In this document: piece after piece, positions 1 to 11,502 of the stretch
Numbering within the stretch: position 1 is the stretch's first letter
Layout: every line of letters starts with the position of its first letter
From: Ascidiella aspersa
Taxonomy: Eukaryota
Length of the DNA: 64,000 nt
Assembly (NCBI GenBank): GCA_963924565.1
Contig: OZ004609.1
Location: forward strand, 32,922,001-32,986,000
Direction: 5' to 3'
Notes under the pieces: generated by a model
Told to the model about the DNA's origin: nothing
Databases searched by the model: none
Seen by the model: the letters and a program-made list of their open reading frames with translations, nothing else
Position numbers and translations under genes: made by a program

Positions 1-19
1 CCCCCACACGGACCCTTAC

Positions 20-2884
20 CCCGCTGGGTGAAGTGTAGCTTGCAATGATACCCATCGGGTAAATCTAAAAAGAAACAAGGCTTCTTTTAGAGTTTTGTAA
101 TAAGCATACAACGGGCGGAAGTTTAACTCTTCAACACGTGAAGGGTTGTTAGTGTTACATCCATTTTCCAATAATTGCTGATTTTTATTAGAGTTAGACA
201 GTCGTGCGGCAATCGTTGTGAATTGACTAATTTTTTGGTCGTTCATTTAGTGCTGACCATTGTTGACGACGTTTTGTCGCTATTTTGTGCAAAAAGACAA
301 CATTTCCTGCATGAAAAGATCTTGGTGAAGTGAGTTTTACACATGTTCTGCGACCCTGATAACCTGTCAACAAGCAAAATGTAACTTCTGCCGGGGTTTA
401 CTGCGATGACCTAAGTCAGTCTTTCTCAACCAATGGGTAGCCGCTTAAATTTGTTTGGTTCACCGATTGCACACGATAACTTGATTTGATTTTTGTATAT
501 TTTTTATAAACATAACTTCTTCAAAGTTTGACACAATTGCGGAAGCAATATGAAGATATGAAAATCAAACTTAAAATTGTTTGTCCCAATTTTGTATTTG
601 TGTTTTGGTCACTTTAAGCTTACAAAAAGTTCTGGGTAGAGGATTGGGTCGCCAAATCTTGTCTGTATTCTTTCGCTTGTTAATTGGTTCGCCGCGAAAA
701 AGGTTTGAGAAACACTGGCCTTATAGTGGTTAATTCGCCCAAATTTAAATGACTTTTTTATGTGAGAACGTTTCTTAAAGTGTTTTTTATTACTTGTATT
801 GAAATGTGTTTAACCAAATATTTAATAGTTTCTTGTAATCGGAATAAATTATCAATTTTTGGCTCTCTAAATATGCCTTAACTGGGACTCGTCTTCAGTA
901 TTTCGGTTGTGACTTAATTGTTATATATTAAAAAATACGTGACTTGGATCCACGTTATTTTACAAACGTCTTGACTGAGTCTTAGATCATTTGAAAAATG
1001 ACTTGTTTACAACAGTGATTACTATATTATGACGTAATAGTGACCTGTCCATCCAATCCGCATCGTCTCGGGTGTCCGATGTTTCTGGTCACGTGCACAG
1101 AGAGTGTTCCCAAGCCGTTGAAGTCGGTAATCACGTTCTTGCTCATTTCCAGGGCGTCTTGGGGCCACGACAGGTACGGGTCGCACTGATTCTGTTGGGG
1201 CGAGACAAAAATCAAGCAAACAGGGCAAACGCGTGTTTCTGGCGGCAAAAATATCTGTTGGCGCATGAAAAAACAATAGTAGACAAGGCAAACATGTTTT
1301 TAGGAGCAAAATACAGACTGGTAAAAATAATTTTTATATTTTGTTTAGGACCACCTGTTATCAATTAAGTTGGAAAATTTAAGATCAATGCAAGTTTTCA
1401 TGTAATTTGAAAAATAGGGATAAAATGAAAGAACGTACGCAGTTTAAAACGATAGATTTGATTCGTTTTAAGTGTACTTAATATTTTTTGTTGCACAATT
1501 TTAAATTTAGATATTGCGAAACTCCCTGTTAATGCTGTTGTACGAAGCGCGTCTAAATAAAAATAAATTTTAGGCCAATTTTCACTTTTAATAGTTTCTG
1601 GACCGAAAATTGAAGGTATTTTAAGTTTACTTGTTCAATAACGTCATCTGTAAAAAAGACTTACGCCGATCCTGGTCGAGACAAACCAAAAAATTAAATA
1701 ATCTTAAATATTATCTAATGAATGATTATTACTTGTAACTTTTTGAGGGTCGCGTTTTGGGCTTTAGGCTGACGAAAAATGTGACAATTGTCGTCTGGCC
1801 AGGTTTCAACAATTCAGCATCGCACTGAATTTTTTTGTACTTTAAACCACAACAGAAGGAAGTGAATACAAGTGTCTTCTTGGTGGCATCATGCTATGGT
1901 GAAATTACTCAAAATAAAAAGTCGAGGATTCTCTACTAGCTATTTGACTGCTACGAAAAATTGGGCTTTAAACTTTTTTCTTCACTTTTGTAATTTTTAA
2001 ATCAGCGACGATTGTGATGGCGCTCATTACTTGGTATGTAAGTTTGTGTTTTTATAATTTACCTGGTTAAAGACAAGTATAATTTTGAAACGGGGCTAAG
2101 AAAAAACACTAAGCATTAATAAAACATTTGGAAACCATACTACATTTGTTATATTCTGACTGGCCAAAAAACTAAGGTTGTATCTTGATGGATCGAAATT
2201 ATCGGCAGAAATTTTTGTCGATCAATGCTAAGATATCATATGTGTCGCATAAGGGCAGCAACAGTTTCCTTATTCGAAAGTATTTCATAAATATTTTTTT
2301 AAGCAAACGTCCAATCAGGCTTTTCTCGGCAAGTTAAGTTTTAATTGTTCAAGTACACGTTAGCGGGTCAGTAACAGCAAAACATGAATGTTCTTCAATG
2401 TCTTCGTATCCATCAAAAGTAGATTCTCGTACTGATTGAAAAAATACGACGTAACACTGCATACGTTTCAATCGCAAAACACGCAGCAAAAAAAAAAAAA
2501 AAAGTTTATCCCAATGTTTTTTACAAACTAACCTTCGGGTCATAAACGCACTTGGTCTTTGAATTCGACTTTTTCACGGCACTTAAATCAAGCCTGGCTC
2601 CCTGAAGAGGCCTTCCGAAGCTAGTGACCAAGGTGGGAATCTTCCATGTTTGTCCTCGACTCAGGCGGTGGGTAAATTCACCCATCGTCTGCGAGTAAAA
2701 CTTTTAAGTTAAAAAACCTGCGATTATCTCGGTCAGAGTTGTGGTCCAGTCATTAACATAGAAAGCTAAAAACAAAGTGAATTCCATAAACATAATATAA
2801 AACAAGTCGCAATTGAAATATCCAAACTATAACAGACAATTGTATAGCACAATTACATTAATCCATGTATAGGGGTGGTAAATA

Positions 2885-2921
<37 letters not shown>

Positions 2922-5900
2922 CATGCGTCGGTATTCCGCCCTATGCTATTTGACCATGACGATTTACAGTGAGCGGCGGCCTTAGCGGTTGCGAAATTAC
3001 TTCTGCATAAGCGCACGTCACACACGGGTTTTGAGTAGTCTTATTAATCCGACTTCTGCCAAATTGACTGCATGACTCCGTCAAGTCGCGAGCCCGACTC
3101 TGACTCGGAAGCCCTGGTGTACACTTTATGAAACTTGGCGTACGAAATCACCTTAAAATTCAAACCGAACGGGTTTTCCAGTGCCACCACGTTGCACCTG
3201 CCCACACTGTTGCCGTTGTACTCGTAGCAGTGGTGTGGTAACATATCGCAAAGATCATAGCGGAGGCGCCGGCTACGGTCGGAAAATTCATTGGCCAAGG
3301 CGGAGCGGTTGACCAGGGCCACGCGGTGGTCAGTTAAGGCATCTAGGATTCTATCAGGTGTTCCATGAAGTGGCAGCTGTACTATCCCACCAAGATAGTG
3401 GTACCTTAAGATGAATAGCAGGTTTAGTACATGTCTAAAAATCGGTTGACCACTGTAAAAAAGAGATCGGTTGAAAACGTTGCTCCGTTAAAAGTGTGAT
3501 CAGGCAAAGGGGCTACTTTACGAGGCTATTCTATTCTGCTTACAGTTAAATTGTTTTTGATTAAAGTAGCTCGCAGTTTGTATTCGAATTTGAGACATGG
3601 CGTTTAAAAAAAACAAGTGTCATACTAGTGTCACCAAGTTGTGCTACAAGTGTTATTAAAACTAAAATATACAGCATTACTCTAAAAACTATATCTTTCA
3701 AGACAAAGCTTAGGATTAGAGGAATCGTCTCGTACGCTATTTATTTTTATGTACACAAACAGGGCCTTTAGGCGTGAAGGATACTCTACCAGTAGTCGTT
3801 CTGGTGGACACGGTCCAGAGCGCCTCCTGTGGTCATTAAATAAAAATGATAACCGCCGCAAGAGAGCGCTCGCGAGTAGCAGTCGTGGCCTTGGTCTTTG
3901 CAAAGGTCTCGATGCGTGAGAACGGCGAAATCTACGTGCTTCAGCGTTGAGAATTTGAAACCTTCGTTGAAGTTGCTTTTCACCACAAAAGACAGGTCGG
4001 CGACAATTTGCTGTGGAATGCAAGACAACTTTGGTAAATCCTGTAAGAAGGAAAATTACTGAAAACACATTTCGCTTTCCGAAGTCTTGGTTTCGTGGTT
4101 TTTAACTTTACAGCGCATGATTAGTAAAGTGCATCAAAAATGAAAAGTAACACAATATACCATATGTCTCTAAGTTAAACCGGTGATGTTTTTTTTACTA
4201 TTTAAAGTCAATGATGAAGAATGTCTGATTTTCATGGCCGTGTGGAATACATTTTAAAGTATTTACGTGGAAAATGAATAAAGAAATGTTCTAACGTTCA
4301 AAATCAAATATGCTGTAGCAACAAACCCGCACCATTTCCCGCAGGTCTAAGTTGAATGGGACTTCCCATTTGGGGTCCAGATTAGGCGTGTGCGTTCTCA
4401 TCACCCGACCACCCCAAAGATTGACCGGGTCGTCTGATGACGTCATCCCAATGGTGCCGGTCAACCGACCGCTCCTTAACTCGTACACGCTGAGTAAATA
4501 AAAAAAGTTACGTCATTTAAGTGTCTGAATGTATCAGTTTGGATTCGATATTCAACAATACGATATGGAATGCCAAAATATTTTTTCTTACACACAATTT
4601 TGGCAAATCCCAAATATCAAGCGGAACTGTAAATCGTTTTTATAGACATATGTCAAACTGTAGCTGTTTGGTTTATTGTAGTTGTATTAAATCAAATGTA
4701 TATGTTAAAACAAAGTTTACTCCGTAGTATAGGTATCGCGAATTTGCCGACTTTTGTTGTTAATTTCGAACAAACTAATTTCGAAACGCTACTATATTTT
4801 ACGTTTGCCAGCCTTAAGTTTCCAAACTTGGTATTATCAAGTTATAGCATATCGTAAACAAGCAGTCTTAGGCAAGTCACATAGTGACGTTCTCTTTCGA
4901 ATATAGCTTGTAGTTAATATATAAATTGTTGTTGCCAGGCATAATATTAAGCAAAAACAGCTCTTGTAATAATTATATTCTCCAACGATTCGCCACCCTA
5001 TTCAAGTTGCCTTCTTCAGTCTTATCGCGTTGTTGCTAGCGTATTTTCTTTTCGTTTTTTTTCTTTATGTTTTGTCATACGATAAGCGTTTGACGTCATT
5101 TATCCTGAAAGCGACTTGTATAGGTTTGCCAAGACGTTGAAAAGAAATCAAATCACAAGATGAGCTGCTTTTTTGAATAAAAGTTTGTATTTATTTATTT
5201 AAGCTGTGGTTCAAGCGGCAAAATGAAATCGCTAGAAAAACGAATAATAAAGAAAAAGAAGGGCGGTTACTTTCAGTACTAGTTTTATCAAGAAACTTAC
5301 AAATTGTCCAGTACAAAAGAGATCGAAAGGGAACTGGAATTCTTGAACTGGCTTTTATATTTGTCATTCAGCCATTCCACGTTCACCAACTTGCTCTTGA
5401 GGTTGGGGGACATTCCAAGATCCCCAGAACTGCAACGAAATTACGTCGGTGGTACTTAACCTTGTGAAAAAGGTTAAGAAAACAACGCAGTGCTGTTTTG
5501 AAATTACTAAAAGTGTCTTAAAGGTGCCACACGTGAGGAAGGAGGGGGGGGGTATTTTCTTTTTTCCGAAACGATCATTTTTTTTACACGGAACGATTGA
5601 AAATTTTTAGAAATGGCATCACAAAGTTAGCAAGTAATTTTGAGAAACCGCGATAACCCAATTTGCAACAAAATAATTAGAAGTAGAATAACGCCTTTTC
5701 AGCTTAGGCTACATTAACCACTATAGTCTTTTCATAAACATTATTCGAAAGTACTAAAATACAAATTTAGGGCTGCGAGCTTCCTACATTTTTTGGCAAT
5801 TTGCAATTAGGTGGAAAAACTGTTAGGGGAGTAAATTCCATTTTTCCATTTTCTTAGACTGAGCTAGGTTATCAAACCACGTTAATCAAAACACTCAAAA

Positions 5901-8900
5901 CTAAACTAAAAACAAATTGAACATGTTAAGTTTTCGTCAAAAAATGAAAAAAGCCGTACACAGGGTAACTCCAATTTTTTTCGTATCCACCATCGACAAA
6001 GACTACTTCGCGTCATTATAACTCCATGGCGTGACAAATACAATTTAGGCTGTTTCATATTTTGCAGAATTATAAGGCATTGTTTAAATGTGAAACTAGA
6101 GTAAATCTGGTCAAGAAAACTGCTGACGCAGCGGACTGACTTTAAGTCACCACATCCGTTTTATTGGGTGTCAGCTTAATGCCGAGTGGCACCGGCTAAC
6201 GGTAAAGCACACCAACAGGTCCCATGTATTGGCCGGGTCAGTGCTGGGACTTTAGCAGCCCAAATTGCATAACGCCATACAAGCAATGACAAGTACAATT
6301 AACTAATACTAAATGCCCGTTTACACTACAGCTGCACCGGGCGTGAAATTATTTTCACTACAGCTGCAGTGAGCTGCGCTCAGCGTAAAAATCGCTCCAA
6401 AACGAAACGTGTTTCAATAGCTGCCCTGGGCTTAAGTTTAGCAAATCGTAACTTTAAGCTAGCTGCAGCTGCTGTACCGGGCTTGAGTTTAGCAAAGCAT
6501 GAAACGCTCGCCACAATAGATTTTAAATGCAAATTACGCTTTGCTCAGCTCATTTCAGCTGTAGTTTAAGCGGGCCTTAACAGTACAAAGTAGCACCAAC
6601 CCGGTCAATAACTTGAACTTGATATTCTTACCCCGGAAAACGGTAAGTGTTGTAGTGAATCTGAGCGGGAAGCATCAGAGCTTTCAACACGCCGTCCACC
6701 ACTAGGTGGTATCCTATCACTTGGGATGCTTCTTGCCAATCAGGATCAAGATCCACCATCCGCCCATGGCTAACACCTGAGCGAAGAAGTCGAGAAAAAA
6801 TGTGGGTATTTTCGGTTTTCTTCCTATACTATAAGACCCAAGAAAACCCACAAAGGTTTAATTGCTGAACTACATTGAGCCTGAAGGATGCATTATGTCT
6901 GATTAAAAACTTTAATCTGTAAAACGGAAACTTAAACAGCTTCGTGCTGCTTTATCATTAATTAATCTCAGGCCTAATTTTGTTCAATAAAAAAGGTCAT
7001 TAAAATTGGTGATGTTCGATACTTGACATTTTAATCGGATCCCGGTATCCTCCTATCAAGACAAAACGAACGCGATCCGATCAGATATCCTAATGCTAAA
7101 TCAAACACAATTGTTTAAACTAAGATAATTTTTGTTCAGATTATATTAAGCCGAAGTTCGTTTTAGTATTAAGAAGTTTGAATACCATAAGTTGTTGTCC
7201 TCCTAGTTTTTTGATGAATTTACCTTTCAAGGCATAATTGCTAAATTGTGTGACAAATCAAATACCACTTCAGCCGATACCACCCTAGTACACGGACAAG
7301 TACCGATACTTCTAATTGGTATCGGCCAAGGTTCGATATTGTCGTACAAAGGTTTTTTTAAGGTTTGGTTTGGGTGAACGCTAAGTAGTTTTATGAGACC
7401 GCAAGTGTTTCATTTAAATACCAAAAAGAAGTCCAAAATTTGGGAAACCGCTGGAGAAATTTGTTTCGGTCCCCCAAAACACTTTAAAAAAAACACTGAT
7501 CGTACATCCCTAATTTAATTTCGATATGTTCCCCTTTGCAATGACGATAACTTTAATTTTTAAGGACAAATACCCCCCCAAAAGGTTTGGCGCAATTACT
7601 ACTCACCGCCTACTGAACGCATGGTCGCACCCCGGCACTTTTTCGTTGGCTCAAAGCACTCCGCAACTGTGTAGGTCTTTTCAAAATAAAAGTGCCCGTT
7701 TCCCATCGGATTGCCTGACATGGCATCATGCATGTAGAGCTGAAATGGATTAGTCAAAAGAAATTGAATTACCATATCGAAAATAATAACGTATCGAAAA
7801 AAGAGCAGCGGTATAGTTACTTTCAAAGAAGCGATTGAAAATCATTTAGCAAAGGTTTGGCAATATTCTTTGTGCTCGATACTTACCTGCTTACTAGAAA
7901 AAATGCAGCACGTTTAACTTTTTATTAGACGTTTAAAATAAATTATATCACGATAACTTTGTGTTATTTTGTCATTAAAGTTTCGCAAGTCTTAATTTGG
8001 TAATTTGTTTTAATAAAATGTTCAAGTGAATGATAAAAGCGATTAAAAACAAAAAATGGACAAAAGTAACAGGGAAAGAATGCGATGTATATAGGTCAGT
8101 CACAGTGTTGTAAAAAAGTGATTTTAAAATGACTTAAGTTCCAGTCGAATCCGTTTAAATAAATGACCATTCAAGTCCCAGTCAAGTCGTATTTAGACCA
8201 AGTCAACTATATGTCACGCCCTTCTCATAAAAATGCAAAGTTAAGCTATTAAGATTGTTAAACTCCTATGACTATAAGAAATAACTGAACTAAAAAATAA
8301 GAAAAACACATCATACAACAAGCAAATGTGCAAAAATTAGGATAAATAACACAATTTTATAAAAAGATACCTAATGAAAACATTTCATTTCAGCCCATTT
8401 ACCCAAAAGACTTGAGTCGAGTAAAGTCAGTTTGCCCAGAAGACTTAAGTCAAGTCAAGTAATTTGAAATCAGTGATTAAGTGCACTTTATTGACTTGTC
8501 ATTACAACACTGGTCAGTCAGTACCACTCGGATTACTTTGGTTACAATAGAAAAAAGAACGATCCAATGTGACTTTGTGTTCGAACTCACTCACATCGCC
8601 TCTATGCAATGCCATCCTCTGCCTGTATGTGTTGCAAGTCGGACAGAAGGCTTCCATGTTGAAGTAGCAGCGTATGTTGTTGGTGGTGGGCGTGCTGGCA
8701 ACAAACCGTCCGTAGAAGTGAATCCGGGGCCAGCCTAAGTAAGCTGTAAAACAGAGGGAGTTTCCTCAATTTTCCTGAATTCTTGAATTTGTAAAAACAG
8801 TTTTTCACGGGTTCGACTGTTTAGTAAGACTCGACTGTTTAGTAAGAAGCCATGTTGTTTTTCAAAGTCAAGTAAATACAACAAACATAATGATGGTACA

Positions 8901-11502
8901 TTTTTTAACCCAATTTAAATAAAATAAAATTATTTAGCGTTCATTTATCATAGAGCAGGGGTTGGCAATTATTATTGACAAGGGTCCGCATGGCTAGAAT
9001 AGAAATGTGTTGGCGGGCCGGATACGAAGGGAATTTAAAATACACAAAATATTCCCAAAACACGTGGACGTATTTCTGTTAAAAGTTTTTATAAAAAGTA
9101 AGTTTGCTTCGCGGGCCGGATTCTGCCTGTGGTTTGCCAGTTCTGCTTTGTGCAACAGCTGGAACCTTCGCTTCTTAAACGAATGTAAGTTGTTATGACT
9201 GTTGACTTTAGTTATTTTTTCAGCTTTTTGGCTATACAAGATAGAATTTATTTTTAACAAATCAAGGTGATCTGGCATAGTAAGCTGTTGCTTTTAAAGT
9301 CTAATGTTTAAACGGCGATTAGGATGTATGTGAATGTATTTAAAAAAAAAGACGAACTATCCTGACAAATGGCTCTGTTTCGGAAATTCAGCATAATAGA
9401 AATTTATTTAATGCTAAGTTTCAAATAGTTTAGAAAATTAAGTCATTGGCAAATGCTACTTTTACTTACTTTGAACAGTTCTAAGTTGTGAGCTGTTTAA
9501 CAGATTTAATTATCAACAGCAGAGTATCTGACTCTAATGAGCGGCGTTTATAATAAACCGCAGATTAAACTGCGATTCAAAAACCTGTTTCCTTATCGAG
9601 ACCATACATTTACAACAGCATAGTGTTAAGGACATATTTTGTTTCAATCAAACTTCCCTATCTCTATAGCTCAAGCTAACATAATTTTAAAACCACCTTC
9701 ACTACAGGCCAAAGCAATAAATAAATACCATACTAATATACGTTATTTGGACAGTTGTTGGACAGTCTGTATTTAAGTCTCTCTGTTTCTTAAACCTATA
9801 CAAATAGGTATACGAACAGGTTTTCTAAAATTAGGTAATATCTGCGGCTAAATGAGAATCTACAGTAAGAGACATCACTGGTTTAGCAACTACAGATACG
9901 GCTGACAAACAGTTTTCTTACAAGGACATATGGCGTCGTAACAATTCTTTTGTTTTTTCCATCCGCCTTTGCACCGGTGTTGTCCTACCATAAGGTGGCG
10001 GTAGCACGACCTCGTTCGAACCTGAATTCCCTTGTCACAAGAGGCGCTACAGGTACTCCATTTCGACCAACGCGACCAAGCTGAAAAAAGAAGTTATGCA
10101 GTTCTCTGAATCAGTCGAATTGCCTGATTTCTAAACATAGATTACCAGCTGTGTGTTTAGCTTAAAGCAGCGATTCTTCAACTTTTTTATCATGCGGACC
10201 CCTTATGATTTCTTGGCATATTGCCGGATCCTTATACCCTATTGGAATATTGGCGGTCCCCTTTATAAAAAAAAATAAAAATTTGCAGTAAAATAAGTAC
10301 TCTTAACAACCAGTTCGGTCATACTCACAATACTTTTTGTACACACGCTTACAAACGATTCATTATCAAAAGAATCCAATAACAAAATATTTTGGGAAAA
10401 AATATATGTATATTTTTTTTAGGCTTTCCAGGTTTTCGACCTTTCCTCACTGGAGATCTGGACGTTTTAAAGGTGCAAAATGTGTAAGTCGTAAAAAAGA
10501 AAACAATCGCGATTTGATGGTGTGAAAATGGTTAAATGCTTAGTTGCCATAGGACGCCCTAACTCAAGTTAAGGAATGCTGGGAATTCGCTTTTTTTAAT
10601 CTTTGTACAAATGAATATCAGAGATTTCTTACTCGGAAGTTTTTTTTTAAACAGTAAGTTTATTTTTATTTTGTAATATAACACCTAAACCAGGGGTCGG
10701 CAACCTACGGCCCGCGGACCGGATCCGGCCCGCCGATGTAATTCATCCGGCCCGCCGCCTCTTTGACAAATTAGACGCGAGTCTATTTTACAAACTCTTC
10801 TATAACTAATTGTGAAAAAAAATTCGCGAATGTTCTTTATACGTCCAGTGTGTTTAGGTTTATAGATGCTGCTTTTGAAAGTAGATCAGCGCTTCTTTAC
10901 CGTTGCGCCAGGAAAGGCTGCCAAGTGCGTCGCGCCAAAACGGAAAACGTATTAAAAAATATTGGACATATATTTTTTAACATATTTTTCCGCATTGCAA
11001 TAAAAACGTGTGAACTCGAATTTTAAACCAAACAAACGTTTTTTTTTCGCGCTTTGCGTCAACACTGCCTCTGTAAATGTAATTAACGTTTAAAGTGCAA
11101 AAAATATCCGTCTGATCCACAGTTGTTCTAACATTTAAATAACACAATTATGAGTTATCATTTTGTGCGGCCCGCAAAGACCTTTCTGAGTTTGGTTTTG
11201 GCCCGCGACTAGAAAAACGTTGCCGACCCCTGATCTAAACAAACTAATTTTCGGTTTACCAAGTTTTTCTGATTAAACTGAACAGTAAATTATTTAAAAC
11301 CTATGTTTTACTCCCAGACGCACTTAAAAAACGGCCATTTAAACCGGCTTAAAACGAATTGACTTTTTCTATTATGACAGAATAGGCTTCCAGCTTTTTG
11401 ACCTGGCCACTCACCGCTTGCGTTTGTTCCACTGGTGAACAATAGAGCTGCCAGCGTTGCGAGTGAAGCAATAGAAAGGAAAGACCGACAGACAATACGC
11501 AT
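20..11502 (-). CDS. Secreted protein: signal peptide + TSP1 repeat + VioB/RebD/StaD-like domain; 3' end lies beyond the left edge
   Basis: 13 GT-AG exons with matching phases: 11502-11415, 10080-9922, 8743-8595, 7739-7607, 6776-6632, 5429-5301, 4489-4333, 4040-3790, 3404-3152, 2688-2552, 1671-1665, 1191-1045, 64-20 (1800 nt, 600 codons, no stop). Exon 1 MRIVCRSFLSIASLATLAALLFTSGTNAS is signal-peptide-like. Exon 2 WSRWSKWSTCSASCDKGIQVRTRSC...C...C....CP is a TSP1 repeat. Downstream motifs YLGWPRIHFYGRFVASTPTTNN, GNPMGNGHFYFE, GRMVDLDPDWQEASQVIG, LTGTIG...GGRVMR, NDYWYHYLGGIVQLPL parallel VioB as I recall it. Confidence 0.85.
4918..5175. mobile_element. Degenerate fold-back element with decayed hammerhead-like cores (Penelope-like/retrozyme remnant)
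   Basis: Shares ccaggcat...aaaaacagctc...ccaacg and ttgtataggtt...acgttg...gagctg..tttttg with the element at 59527-59706; minus strand reads CTGAAGAAGGCAACTTGAATAGGGTGGCGAATCGTTGG. Confidence 0.5.
6313..6577. mobile_element. PIF/Harbinger (Tourist)-type MITE
   Basis: Terminal inverted repeats (TIRs) (a)tgcccgtttacactacagctg / cagctgtagtttaagcgggcct flanked by TAA on both sides; second copy at 55568-55823. Confidence 0.8.
8103..8512. mobile_element. hAT-type MITE rich in (agtca/gactt) motifs
   Basis: TIR cagtgttgtaa / ttacaacactg with 8-bp TSD gtcagtca at 8095-8102 and 8513-8520. Confidence 0.7.
10691..11232. mobile_element. hAT-type MITE
   Basis: TIR caggggtcggcaac / gttgccgacccctg; 8-bp TSD acctaaac / atctaaac (1 mismatch); internal cggcccgc motifs. 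Confidence 0.8.

What the first reader, a model, noticed from the sequence alone, without database searches (positions are those of the whole stretch)
20..11502. Animal-encoded, secreted VioB/RebD/StaD-like protein fused to a TSP1 repeat
Seen: 13 exons splice into 600 open codons that the ORF track does not reveal. Five motifs occur in the same order as in VioB as I recall it: YLGWPRIHFYGRFVASTPTTNN vs ILDFPRIHFRGWARVNAPTANR; GNPMGNGHFYFE vs GYNAAGNNHFSWE; GRMVDLDPDWQEASQV vs ARWVDSDPTRRDAAQI; LTGTIG...GGRVMR vs MVGVVG...AGRLLR; NDYWYHYLGGIVQLPL vs QDYWTNHGIVDLPL. Established: VioB, RebD and StaD are bacterial heme enzymes that oxidatively dimerise indole-3-pyruvate imine in violacein, rebeccamycin and staurosporine biosynthesis; staurosporine-type compounds have been isolated from ascidians and are usually credited to microbes. 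Inference: this is a host gene (12 introns, MITE insertions, so not contamination) for an extracellular oxidative-coupling enzyme, perhaps in pigment, defence or tunic cross-linking chemistry. It may be closer to the uncharacterised bacterial VioB-like relatives than to VioB itself, so the substrate is unknown.
Basis: partly seen in the sequence, partly recalled or inferred. Interest (0 to 1): 0.9.

Follow-up and report, generated by a model that had tools for sequence, protein, structure and literature searches.

The report
Sea-squirt secreted VioB-superfamily gene
This is a real, intron-rich sea-squirt gene for a secreted protein whose core is a distant relative of the bacterial pigment and alkaloid enzyme VioB, most likely acquired from bacteria and then given a signal peptide and an adhesion module, but its chemistry is unknown and it is not a true VioB.

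Summary
On the minus strand, 12 exons in the window (about 613 codons, ATG at 11502) continue through 8 more exons left of the window. Together they encode about 1,300 residues: signal peptide, one TSP1 repeat, a roughly 600-residue beta-rich region, and a C-terminal PF12902 ferritin-like domain.

The model is collinear with Ciona LOC100180317 (45% identity). Orthologues occur in Ciona, Clavelina and Styela, and one jellyfish has a homologue.

The N-terminal region alone matches VioB by profile-profile comparison (97.7%, E 1.6e-12; reversed control 0.1%). It matches an uncharacterised bacterial family of about 900 residues much better (E 5e-53). The VioB equivalog model scores 15-21 bits against a cut-off of 1250, and the tree puts VioB/RebD across a long branch.

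So this is a VioB-superfamily member, not a VioB/StaD orthologue, and nothing supports host-made indolocarbazoles. 43 of 46 superfamily-invariant residues are kept, including a bacterioferritin-like E-M-x-H motif. Ka/Ks against two paralogues is 0.21-0.25.

Expression is unproven: about one read pair and no junctions.

The parts
11415..11502 (-). Exon 1: start codon at 11502 and a hydrophobic signal peptide of about 29 residues; donor GTGAGT, phase 1
   Evidence: Sequence read; Kyte-Doolittle 12-residue maximum 2.35, like the orthologues' N-termini; block conserved in both paralogues
9922..10080 (-). Exon 2: one thrombospondin type 1 (TSP1) repeat
   Evidence: PF00090 at 29.5 bits (cut-off 21.6) and PF19028 E 3e-8; acceptor TTTTTTCAG in phase with exon 1; matches Ciona P0003 residues 18-69
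8574..8743 (-). Exon 3: start of the VioB-like core, carrying the conserved motif L-x-x-P-R-x-H-F-x-G...T-x-N-N
   Evidence: Bacterial-family HMM positions 2-44, i-E 6.6e-8; aligned to VioB residues 2-23; residues P, R, F, G, T kept
7607..7739 (-). Exon 4: N-P-x-G-N-G-H-F motif region; 3' boundary approximate
   Evidence: tblastn to P0003 residues 132-160; tblastx to both paralogues; GTGAGT donor candidate
6632..6776 (-). Exon 5: V-D-L-D-P-x-x-Q motif region; 5' boundary approximate
   Evidence: Bacterial-family HMM positions 96-123, i-E 6e-5; aligned to VioB residues 136-150
6312..6578 (.). Intronic high-copy element with terminal inverted repeats (MITE-like)
   Evidence: Inverted repeats of 23-32 nt; DNA word depth of 16,000-52,000 against a baseline of about 45
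5301..5429 (-). Exon 6
   Evidence: tblastn to P0003 residues 224-264 at 54% identity; GTAAGT donor; conserved in both paralogues
4333..4489 (-). Exon 7: G-R-x-x-G-T-I-G...R motif region
   Evidence: Bacterial-family HMM positions 208-240, i-E 7e-4; aligned to VioB residues 266-290; G, G, R kept
3790..4010 (-). Exon 8, ending in ...N-D-Y-W
   Evidence: tblastn to P0003 residues 318-393; tblastx to paralogues at 67-69% identity
3152..3404 (-). Exon 9, beginning Y-H-Y-L-G-G-I-V; the only exon with RNA reads (about one pair)
   Evidence: phmmer found Ciona P0003 at E 5.5e-7 among 1.8 billion representatives; 69-73% identity to paralogues; RNA depth 0.24-0.92 in these bins only
2578..2688 (-). Exon 10; boundaries approximate
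   Evidence: tblastn to P0003 residues 475-516 at 55% identity; conserved in paralogues
1045..1254 (-). Exon 11
   Evidence: Bacterial-family HMM positions 397-447, i-E 2.6e-4; 79-80% identity to paralogues
1..64 (-). Exon 12, first 64 nt only. It continues to L007:9892 outside the window. Eight further exons (L007 about 9295-9435, 8352-8516, 7376-7561, 6473-6608, 5741-5950, 4962-5093, 3858-4685, 3081-3298) encode the linker and the PF12902 ferritin-like domain
   Evidence: tblastn to P0003 residues 577-1238; PF12902 hits in collinear order on four exons, best 46.7 bits, E 4.8e-12; splice candidates

Best explanation
This is one of three copies in this genome of an ascidian gene family that also occurs in Ciona, Clavelina and Styela, with a relative in a jellyfish. 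It encodes a secreted protein of about 1,300 residues: signal peptide, one TSP1 repeat, then a two-part core homologous along its whole length to bacterial VioB/RebD/StaD-superfamily proteins. The core has a beta-rich N-terminal region of about 600 residues that starts with the invariant P-R-x-H-F motif, followed by a PF12902 ferritin-like four-helix domain. The core descends from an uncharacterised, cytosolic bacterial subfamily of about 900 residues, most likely by ancient horizontal transfer. It later gained introns, a signal peptide and, in ascidians, a TSP1 module. These points are shown. The following is inferred. The protein is exported and held on extracellular matrix or cell surfaces by the TSP1 repeat. 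There it acts as a metal- or heme-dependent oxidase on a small aromatic or otherwise oxidisable substrate, by analogy with the heme-dependent oxidative coupling done by VioB/RebD/StaD. The redox centre would be built from the conserved ferritin-like residues (E...Y, E-M-x-H, E, G-E-G, H), and the beta-rich N-terminal region would hold the substrate. The substrate is unknown and is probably not indole-3-pyruvate imine.
For: Gene structure and collinearity with Ciona P0003 residues 18-1238. TSP1 above the Pfam cut-off. PF12902 on four downstream exons in order. Family membership: 42 hits including 5 Ciona, 3 Clavelina and 2 Styela proteins and one Sanderia protein. N-terminal-only hhalign, ascidian against bacterial 900-residue family: 100%, E 5e-53. 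Against VioB: 97.7%, E 1.6e-12. Against RebD-like: 96.3%, E 1.9e-9. Reversed controls: 0.1-0.3%. Whole-length VioB against family profile: 99.9%, E 2e-31, 784 collinear columns. 13 exon segments hit the bacterial-family HMM in order. In the tree, ascidians are monophyletic (100*), with the jellyfish as sister (99*), among bacterial sequences and far from VioB/RebD. 43 of 46 superfamily-invariant residues are retained, including every candidate metal ligand. The E...Y and E-M-x-H motifs align with those of bacterioferritin and of ferritin-like 3hl1. Ka/Ks is 0.21-0.25 against the paralogues over 520-704 codons. Animal orthologues have hydrophobic N-terminal signal sequences, whereas in bacteria the P-R-x-H-F motif sits at residues 7-11 with no leader.
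Against: No member of this animal family or of the closest bacterial subfamily has a known activity, so the chemistry rests on a distant analogy: a branch of 2.17 substitutions per site to VioB/RebD. Bacterial gene neighbourhoods gave no biosynthetic clue. No solved structure exists for any superfamily member, and the AF2 model's N-terminal domains only weakly resemble small beta-barrels and Ig-like sandwiches (Z at most 7.8, within the tool's stated background). Expression of this copy is not shown. Heme or iron binding is untested.
Confidence: 0.55

Rival explanations
1. It is a functional equivalent of VioB/StaD/RebD. The animal itself dimerises tryptophan-derived indole-3-pyruvate imine and so makes bisindole or indolocarbazole (staurosporine-type) scaffolds that are usually credited to symbionts.
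For: Whole-length homology to VioB, with the five motifs aligned, and shared invariant residues. From general knowledge, not tested here: staurosporine-type compounds have been isolated from ascidians.
Against: The TIGR04492 VioB equivalog scores 15-21 bits against a cut-off of 1250 on the orthologues, and i-E is 0.25-0.7 on this gene's exons. The family lies across a long branch from the VioB+RebD clade and groups with an uncharacterised subfamily. The protein is secreted and matrix-tethered, whereas the known pathway is cytosolic and needs a partner L-Trp oxidase delivering an unstable imine. No partner gene was looked for or seen.
Confidence: 0.07
2. It is not an enzyme. It is a secreted metal-binding or matrix protein that uses the ferritin-like domain to bind or store iron or another metal, or serves structurally, with the TSP1 repeat as anchor.
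For: Ferritin-like domain with bacterioferritin-type E...Y / E-M-x-H residues; the TSP1 module is typical of matrix proteins; no catalytic activity is known for the nearest subfamily.
Against: The roughly 600-residue N-terminal region is conserved from bacteria to animals together with the ferritin-like domain, including invariant R, E and P-R-x-H-F residues. That pattern fits a composite active site better than plain metal storage. The only characterised relatives are enzymes. The bacterial homologues are single cytosolic proteins, not cage-forming ferritins.
Confidence: 0.2
3. It is a decaying or silent gene copy, or bacterial contamination, with no present function.
For: Almost no RNA reads in the one run sampled, and no splice junction seen. 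Searches reported stop codons inside the matches to the two paralogues, though these may lie in flanking intron sequence.
Against: The exons are open and collinear, with canonical splice sites. Ka/Ks is 0.21-0.25. 43 of 46 invariant residues are kept. The locus lies on a 39-Mb contig between animal-type introns carrying high-copy host repeats. Only about 6% of one RNA run of unknown tissue was read.
Confidence: 0.05

Closest known systems
Uncharacterised bacterial 'ferritin-like protein' family of about 900 residues (e.g. P0013, P0016 Roseivirga, P0026 Streptomyces, P0133 Chromobacterium sp.)
   Same: Same two-part core from the S-Y-L-x-x-P-R-x-H-F start to the end of PF12902. N-terminal-only hhalign 100%, E 5e-53. 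Its HMM hits 13 exon segments of this gene in order. It is the nearest group in both trees.
   Different: Bacterial proteins have no signal peptide, no TSP1 repeat and no introns, and the core motif sits at residues 2-11. About 25-29% identity to the ascidian proteins. Function unknown.
VioB / RebD / StaD (iminophenyl-pyruvate dimer synthase, chromopyrrolic acid synthase; NCBIfam TIGR04492)
   Same: Homologous over the whole core: 99.9%, E 2e-31, 784 columns. N-terminal region alone: 97.7%, E 1.6e-12. 46 residues are conserved across all groups. Same order of the N-terminal region and the PF12902 domain.
   Different: Separate clade across a branch of 2.17 substitutions per site. The equivalog model scores 15-21 bits against 1250. 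Pairwise BLASTP reaches only E 0.002. VioB is cytosolic and encoded in vioABCDE-type clusters, whereas this protein is a secreted animal protein with a TSP1 repeat.
Ascidian RefSeq models 'uncharacterized protein LOC100180317' and others (Ciona), LOC143461065 (Clavelina; UniProt auto-name 'Iminophenyl-pyruvate dimer synthase domain-containing protein'), LOC120337767 (Styela clava)
   Same: Same family and domain order (signal peptide, TSP1, core, PF12902). 36-45% identity and collinear over all exons.
   Different: The three copies in this genome form their own clade (100*), so they are lineage-specific duplicates and not one-to-one orthologues. None of these models has been studied in the papers I could search.
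Bacterioferritin (1nf4) and Caulobacter ferritin-like protein 3hl1
   Same: The first two helices of the C-terminal domain align with them (E 1.4e-3 and 3.9e-16). The E...Y and E-M-x-H residues coincide. From general knowledge, in bacterioferritin these are di-iron ligands and the heme-ligating methionine.
   Different: Here the domain is one part of a protein of 900-1,300 residues, with large insertions. There is no evidence of cage assembly.
TSP1-repeat matrix proteins (thrombospondin-1, properdin, ADAMTS, F-spondin)
   Same: One canonical TSP1 repeat with the W-x-x-W and C-S-x-x-C-G pattern.
   Different: Only a single repeat, attached to a core of bacterial type.

Membership tests
VioB equivalog (NCBIfam TIGR04492, iminophenyl-pyruvate dimer synthase) | Whole-protein score at or above the curated cut-off of 1250 bits | tested here: not met
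   Ascidian orthologues score 15-21 bits, E 4e-3 to 7e-5. This gene's exons against a VioB-clade HMM give i-E 0.25-0.7. The true VioB scores 1865 bits.
VioB/RebD/StaD superfamily (homology, not function) | N-terminal region homologous to that of VioB, independently of the ferritin-like domain | tested here: met
   N-terminal-only hhalign of the ascidian alignment against the VioB alignment: 97.7%, E 1.6e-12, 243 columns. Against RebD-like: 96.3%, E 1.9e-9. Reversed control: 0.1%.
VioB/RebD/StaD superfamily (homology, not function) | C-terminal PF12902 ferritin-like domain following the N-terminal region | tested here: met
   PF12902 on four consecutive exons, profile positions 1-34, 35-76, 80-107 and 126-220. 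Scores are 26.1, 46.7, 17.6 and 27.5 bits against a cut-off of 22.3.
VioB/RebD/StaD superfamily (homology, not function) | Retention of residues invariant across all clades | tested here: met
   43 of 46 retained. The three exceptions are S to A, D to T and M to Y, the last at a doubtful exon edge.
VioB/RebD/StaD (function) | Heme b cofactor and oxidative dimerisation of indole-3-pyruvate imine | not testable with these tools
   Needs purified protein. Only a bacterioferritin-like E-M-x-H motif was seen.
VioB/RebD/StaD (function) | A partner L-tryptophan oxidase (VioA/RebO/StaO) and downstream pathway genes | not tested
   No search of G000 for VioA/StaO/StaP-like genes was made. Contexts of the bacterial 900-residue family showed no such partner.
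TSP1 repeat (Pfam PF00090) | Score above the Pfam gathering threshold | tested here: met
   29.5 bits against 21.6, E 8.3e-7, profile positions 1-47 of 49.
Secreted animal protein | N-terminal signal peptide | tested here: inconclusive
   There is a hydrophobic stretch after the ATG (Kyte-Doolittle 2.35), as in 7 of 9 ascidian orthologues and in the jellyfish protein. No dedicated signal-peptide predictor was available.
Host (animal) gene, not contamination | Spliceosomal introns, chromosomal context and orthologues in related animals | tested here: met
   About 19 GT..AG introns. The gene lies on 39-Mb contig C3 with two paralogues. Orthologues are present in three other ascidian genera. Host high-copy repeats lie in its introns.
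Expressed gene | RNA reads joining the exons | tested here: inconclusive
   About 6% of RNA run X3 was read. Roughly one read pair fell on exon 9, none on the other exons, and no junction was seen.

The most novel reading that the evidence does not exclude
Ascidians, and at least one jellyfish, carry a bacterial-derived VioB-superfamily oxidase that was re-targeted to the outside of the cell and, in ascidians, tethered by a TSP1 repeat. There it would carry out heme- or di-iron-dependent oxidative coupling of aromatic metabolites or peptides. This would give the animal its own route to cross-linked tunic material, pigments or pyrrole/bisindole-type alkaloids now attributed to symbionts.
Probability: 0.25. 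Interest if true: 0.85.

Novelty: new variant of a known kind. Interest (0 to 1): 0.62.

Why it matters
VioB/RebD/StaD enzymes have so far been characterised in bacterial pathways, and no structure has been solved for any member. This work shows that an animal lineage holds an expanded, selectively maintained family of their relatives: 3 copies here, at least 5 in Ciona, and others in Clavelina and Styela. These relatives have been rebuilt as secreted, matrix-tethered proteins. That adds a substantial candidate to the short list of bacterial genes domesticated by tunicates. The family is absent from the 2026 Ciona HGT survey (PMC13390645) and from every paper I could search. It also offers a tractable model, Ciona, for finding out what the large uncharacterised bacterial subfamily does. 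Finally, it makes testable whether some 'symbiont' chemistry of ascidians is host-encoded. The conserved bacterioferritin-like E-M-x-H motif suggests where the cofactor of the whole superfamily might bind.

Tried and rejected
- **Pfam and NCBIfam on single N-terminal exons:** nothing except TSP1.
- **ESM Atlas and PDB sequence search with exon 9:** uninformative.
- **VioB-clade and RebD-clade HMMs directly on exon translations:** not significant.
- **Pairwise BLASTP of VioB against Ciona P0003:** marginal, E 0.002.
- **Foldseek and VIA-align of the AF2 model of Clavelina P0010:** only generic beta-sandwich and beta-barrel matches. TM is about 0.1 and Z is at most 7.8, within the tool's background. 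The similarity to dirigent, PloI4 and lipocalin-like barrels is a lead only.
- **Bacterial gene neighbourhoods (L015, L020):** no biosynthetic partners. L020 proved to be a different architecture, a GMC oxidoreductase followed by a stand-alone PF12902 protein.
- **RNA reads:** no splice junctions, so expression could neither be shown nor excluded.
- **Literature searches:** searches for VioB with tunicates, for PF12902 and for the Ciona LOC identifiers found nothing on this family. The two PF12902 mentions found are unrelated.
- **Joined spliced protein:** Exons were searched one by one by reference. The Ciona (P0003) and Clavelina (P0010) proteins served as full-length proxies.
- **Contamination and pseudogene readings:** rejected for the reasons given under the rival explanations.

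Full report
**1. What is in the sequence**

The window is G000:C3:32922001-32986000 of a 308-Mb, 75-contig assembly.

I compared the region with two paralogous loci on the same chromosome, near C3:31.30 Mb and 31.63 Mb, and with the Ciona protein P0003. Together these define about 20 coding exons.

Twelve exons lie in the window, the last only partly:
- 11415-11502
- 9922-10080
- 8574-8743
- 7607-7739
- 6632-6776
- 5301-5429
- 4333-4489
- 3790-4010
- 3152-3404
- 2578-2688
- 1045-1254
- 1-64, continuing left of the window

Eight more exons lie left of the window in L007 (C3:32912001-32922000). They end at a stop codon at L007:3078-3080. The gene therefore spans about 18.4 kb and encodes roughly 1,300 residues.

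Nearly every intron has a GT..AG pair in the right phase that reproduces the residue count of the Ciona orthologue. A few boundaries are approximate: introns 2-4, 8, 9, 16 and 17.

Exon 1 reads from the ATG at 11502 through a hydrophobic leader to a GTGAGT donor in phase 1. Exon 2 follows a TTTTTTCAG acceptor and completes that codon.

Exons were searched singly by reference, and full-length orthologues served as proxies.

**2. Domain content**

Exon 2 is a TSP1 repeat (PF00090, 29.5 bits against a cut-off of 21.6). The other in-window exons match no Pfam or NCBIfam model.

Four of the exons left of the window match PF12902 'Ferritin-like' in collinear order (profile positions 1-34, 35-76, 80-107 and 126-220). 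The best score is 46.7 bits, E 4.8e-12.

**3. Relatives**

A phmmer search of exon 9 against 1.8 billion representative proteins gave only three hits. One was the 1,254-residue Ciona intestinalis protein LOC100180317, P0003. P0003 has TSP1 at residues 22-65, then about 700 residues without a Pfam match, then PF12902 at 763-1083.

Searching with P0003 residues 70-760 found these proteins:
- five Ciona paralogues
- three Clavelina proteins, one auto-named by UniProt 'Iminophenyl-pyruvate dimer synthase domain-containing protein'
- two Styela clava proteins
- one protein of the jellyfish Sanderia malayensis
- bacterial 'ferritin-like proteins' of about 900 residues, at E 1e-29 to 1e-10 over about 95% of the region

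A profile search found 735 such proteins. The 120 listed are all of this bacterial or metagenomic type, including Acidobacteriota, Myxococcaceae, Chloroflexota, Streptomyces and a Chromobacterium species.

**4. Is it VioB-like?**

I obtained a true VioB from Chromobacterium vaccinii (L029:1501-4494, minus strand). It scores 1865 bits on TIGR04492, whose cut-off is 1250.

Against the family profile, VioB gives hhalign probability 99.9%, E 2e-31, over 784 collinear columns.

Because the shared ferritin-like domain could drive that result, I repeated the test with N-terminal regions only:

| Ascidian N-terminal region against | Probability | E-value |
|---|---|---|
| VioB clade | 97.7% | 1.6e-12 |
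| Cyanobacterial RebD-like clade | 96.3% | 1.9e-9 |
| Bacterial 900-residue family | 100% | 5e-53 |
| Reversed-sequence controls | 0.1-0.3% | 0.2-0.5 |

Tested directly on this gene's exon translations, the bacterial-family HMM hits 13 exon segments in strict order, spanning HMM positions 2 to 889 of 896, with i-E down to 5e-14. The VioB-clade HMM gives only i-E 0.25-0.7, though at the expected positions.

The VioB equivalog model scores the ascidian proteins at 15-21 bits. Pairwise BLASTP between VioB and P0003 reaches only E 0.002.

Homology to VioB is therefore established, but it is distant. The gene is not a VioB/StaD/RebD orthologue.

**5. Phylogeny**

A 56-protein tree was built with IQ-TREE (LG+C20 PMSF, quick search, SH-aLRT support).
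- VioB and RebD-like proteins sit on one side of a branch of 2.17 substitutions per site.
- On the other side are the main bacterial clade (30 rows, 99*), four ENA sequences of unknown origin, and an animal clade (99*).
- In the animal clade the nine ascidian proteins are monophyletic (100*), with the topology Styela,(Clavelina,Ciona). The jellyfish protein is sister to them, on a long branch that calls for caution.

A second tree used only the large C-terminal exon, which is a single exon and needed no joining.
- The three copies from this genome form their own clade (100*), inside Ciona+Clavelina+this genome (97*).
- The whole animal clade groups with particular bacterial sequences (95*).

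All outgroups and neighbours are bacterial. No other eukaryote appeared among the hits listed. The most economical reading is ancient bacterium-to-animal transfer followed by lineage-specific duplication. Whether ascidians and the jellyfish share one transfer remains open.

**6. Signs of function**

Across all clades, 46 alignment columns are conserved. This gene keeps 43 of them. The retained residues include:
- P-R-x-H-F-x-G at the very start of the core
- an R, an E and several G residues in the N-terminal region
- M-P-x-T-R-x-L-S in the linker
- in the ferritin-like domain: E...Y, E-E-M-x-H, E-x-P, G-E-G and H

The first two helices of that domain align with bacterioferritin (1nf4, E 1.4e-3) and with ferritin-like 3hl1 (E 3.9e-16), so that E, Y and E-M-x-H coincide. 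From general knowledge, these positions in bacterioferritin are di-iron ligands and the heme-binding methionine. This is a hypothesis for where the cofactor sits, not a result.

Ka/Ks against the two paralogues is 0.21 and 0.25, over 704 and 520 codons respectively.

Animal family members carry an N-terminal hydrophobic leader. Bacterial members and VioB begin directly with the core motif. This fits a move from cytosol to secretion.

An AF2 model of the Clavelina N-terminal fragment P0010 (pTM 0.78) is almost entirely beta structure. Its PDB matches are weak and generic.

**7. What is not shown**

- **Expression.** One RNA-seq run of the same species label, read to about 6%, placed roughly one read pair on exon 9. 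No read fell on another exon and no splice junction was seen. All other RNA signal fell on high-copy intronic repeats.
- **Cofactor, substrate and activity.** None can be tested with these tools.
- **Bacterial context.** Gene neighbourhoods were uninformative.
- **Indolocarbazoles.** Nothing links the family to this chemistry.

**8. Prior knowledge**

RefSeq and UniProt hold unstudied models of the orthologues. The searchable literature contains no description of them.

The 2026 survey of horizontally transferred genes in Ciona (PMC13390645) lists eight groups, none of them this family. Its BLASTP threshold (E below 1e-25 against a small landmark set) would probably have missed it.

I did not test that note. 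It suggests that attaching TSP1 repeats to bacterial-type domains may recur in this lineage.

**9. Verdict**

It is unsupported on chemistry.

I class this as a new variant of a known kind: an animal, secreted, TSP1-tethered branch of the VioB superfamily.

Noticed in passing
G000:C3:31296001-31326000 (L011-L013, minus strand) and C3:31622001-31652000 (L008-L010, plus strand): Two paralogues of the gene lie 1.3-1.6 Mb away on the same chromosome, 69-87% identical per exon. The three copies form a lineage-specific clade. Searches reported stop codons inside some matches, which may lie in flanking intron sequence; intactness was not checked exon by exon.
   Followed up: partly
window 6312-6578; also about 7200-7600 and 8200-8600: Intronic repeats of very high copy number: DNA word depth of 16,000-116,000 against a baseline of about 45. 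The first has 23-32-nt terminal inverted repeats (MITE-like). Nearly all RNA reads laid on the stretch came from these repeats.
   Followed up: partly
P0015 (EukProt, Sanderia malayensis, 1168 aa): A jellyfish homologue has a eukaryote-type signal peptide directly before the P-R-I-H-F core motif and no TSP1 repeat. It groups with the ascidian clade (98-99*) on a long branch. This could reflect one ancient transfer with many losses, two transfers, or long-branch attraction.
   Followed up: partly
L020:5981-9008 (Chromobacterium vaccinii) and L025:6221-9452 (Colwellia): A different PF12902 architecture. In L020 a GMC-family FAD oxidoreductase of 632 aa is followed, with overlap, by a stand-alone ferritin-like protein of 378 aa, next to an aerolysin gene and a radical-SAM gene. 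In L025 only the two ORF sizes (587 and 491 aa) are known; its first ORF was not run against Pfam.
   Followed up: partly
L015:8001-10955 (Chloroflexia MAG): Here the 900-residue family member appears split into two ORFs of 624 and 346 aa. This is either a natural split or an assembly frameshift.
   Followed up: no
Family alignment; Ciona P0003 residues 770-806; this gene L007:7438-7461 and 6584-6598: The invariant E...Y and E-M-x-H residues of every VioB-superfamily clade coincide with bacterioferritin's di-iron ligands and heme-binding methionine. This may indicate where the heme of VioB/RebD/StaD binds, which to my knowledge has not been established.
   Followed up: partly
P0039, P0041, P0042, P0044 (ENA, contigs up to 1.28 Mb): A third, deep-branching group of 1,027-1,118-residue family members of unknown organism.
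   Followed up: no
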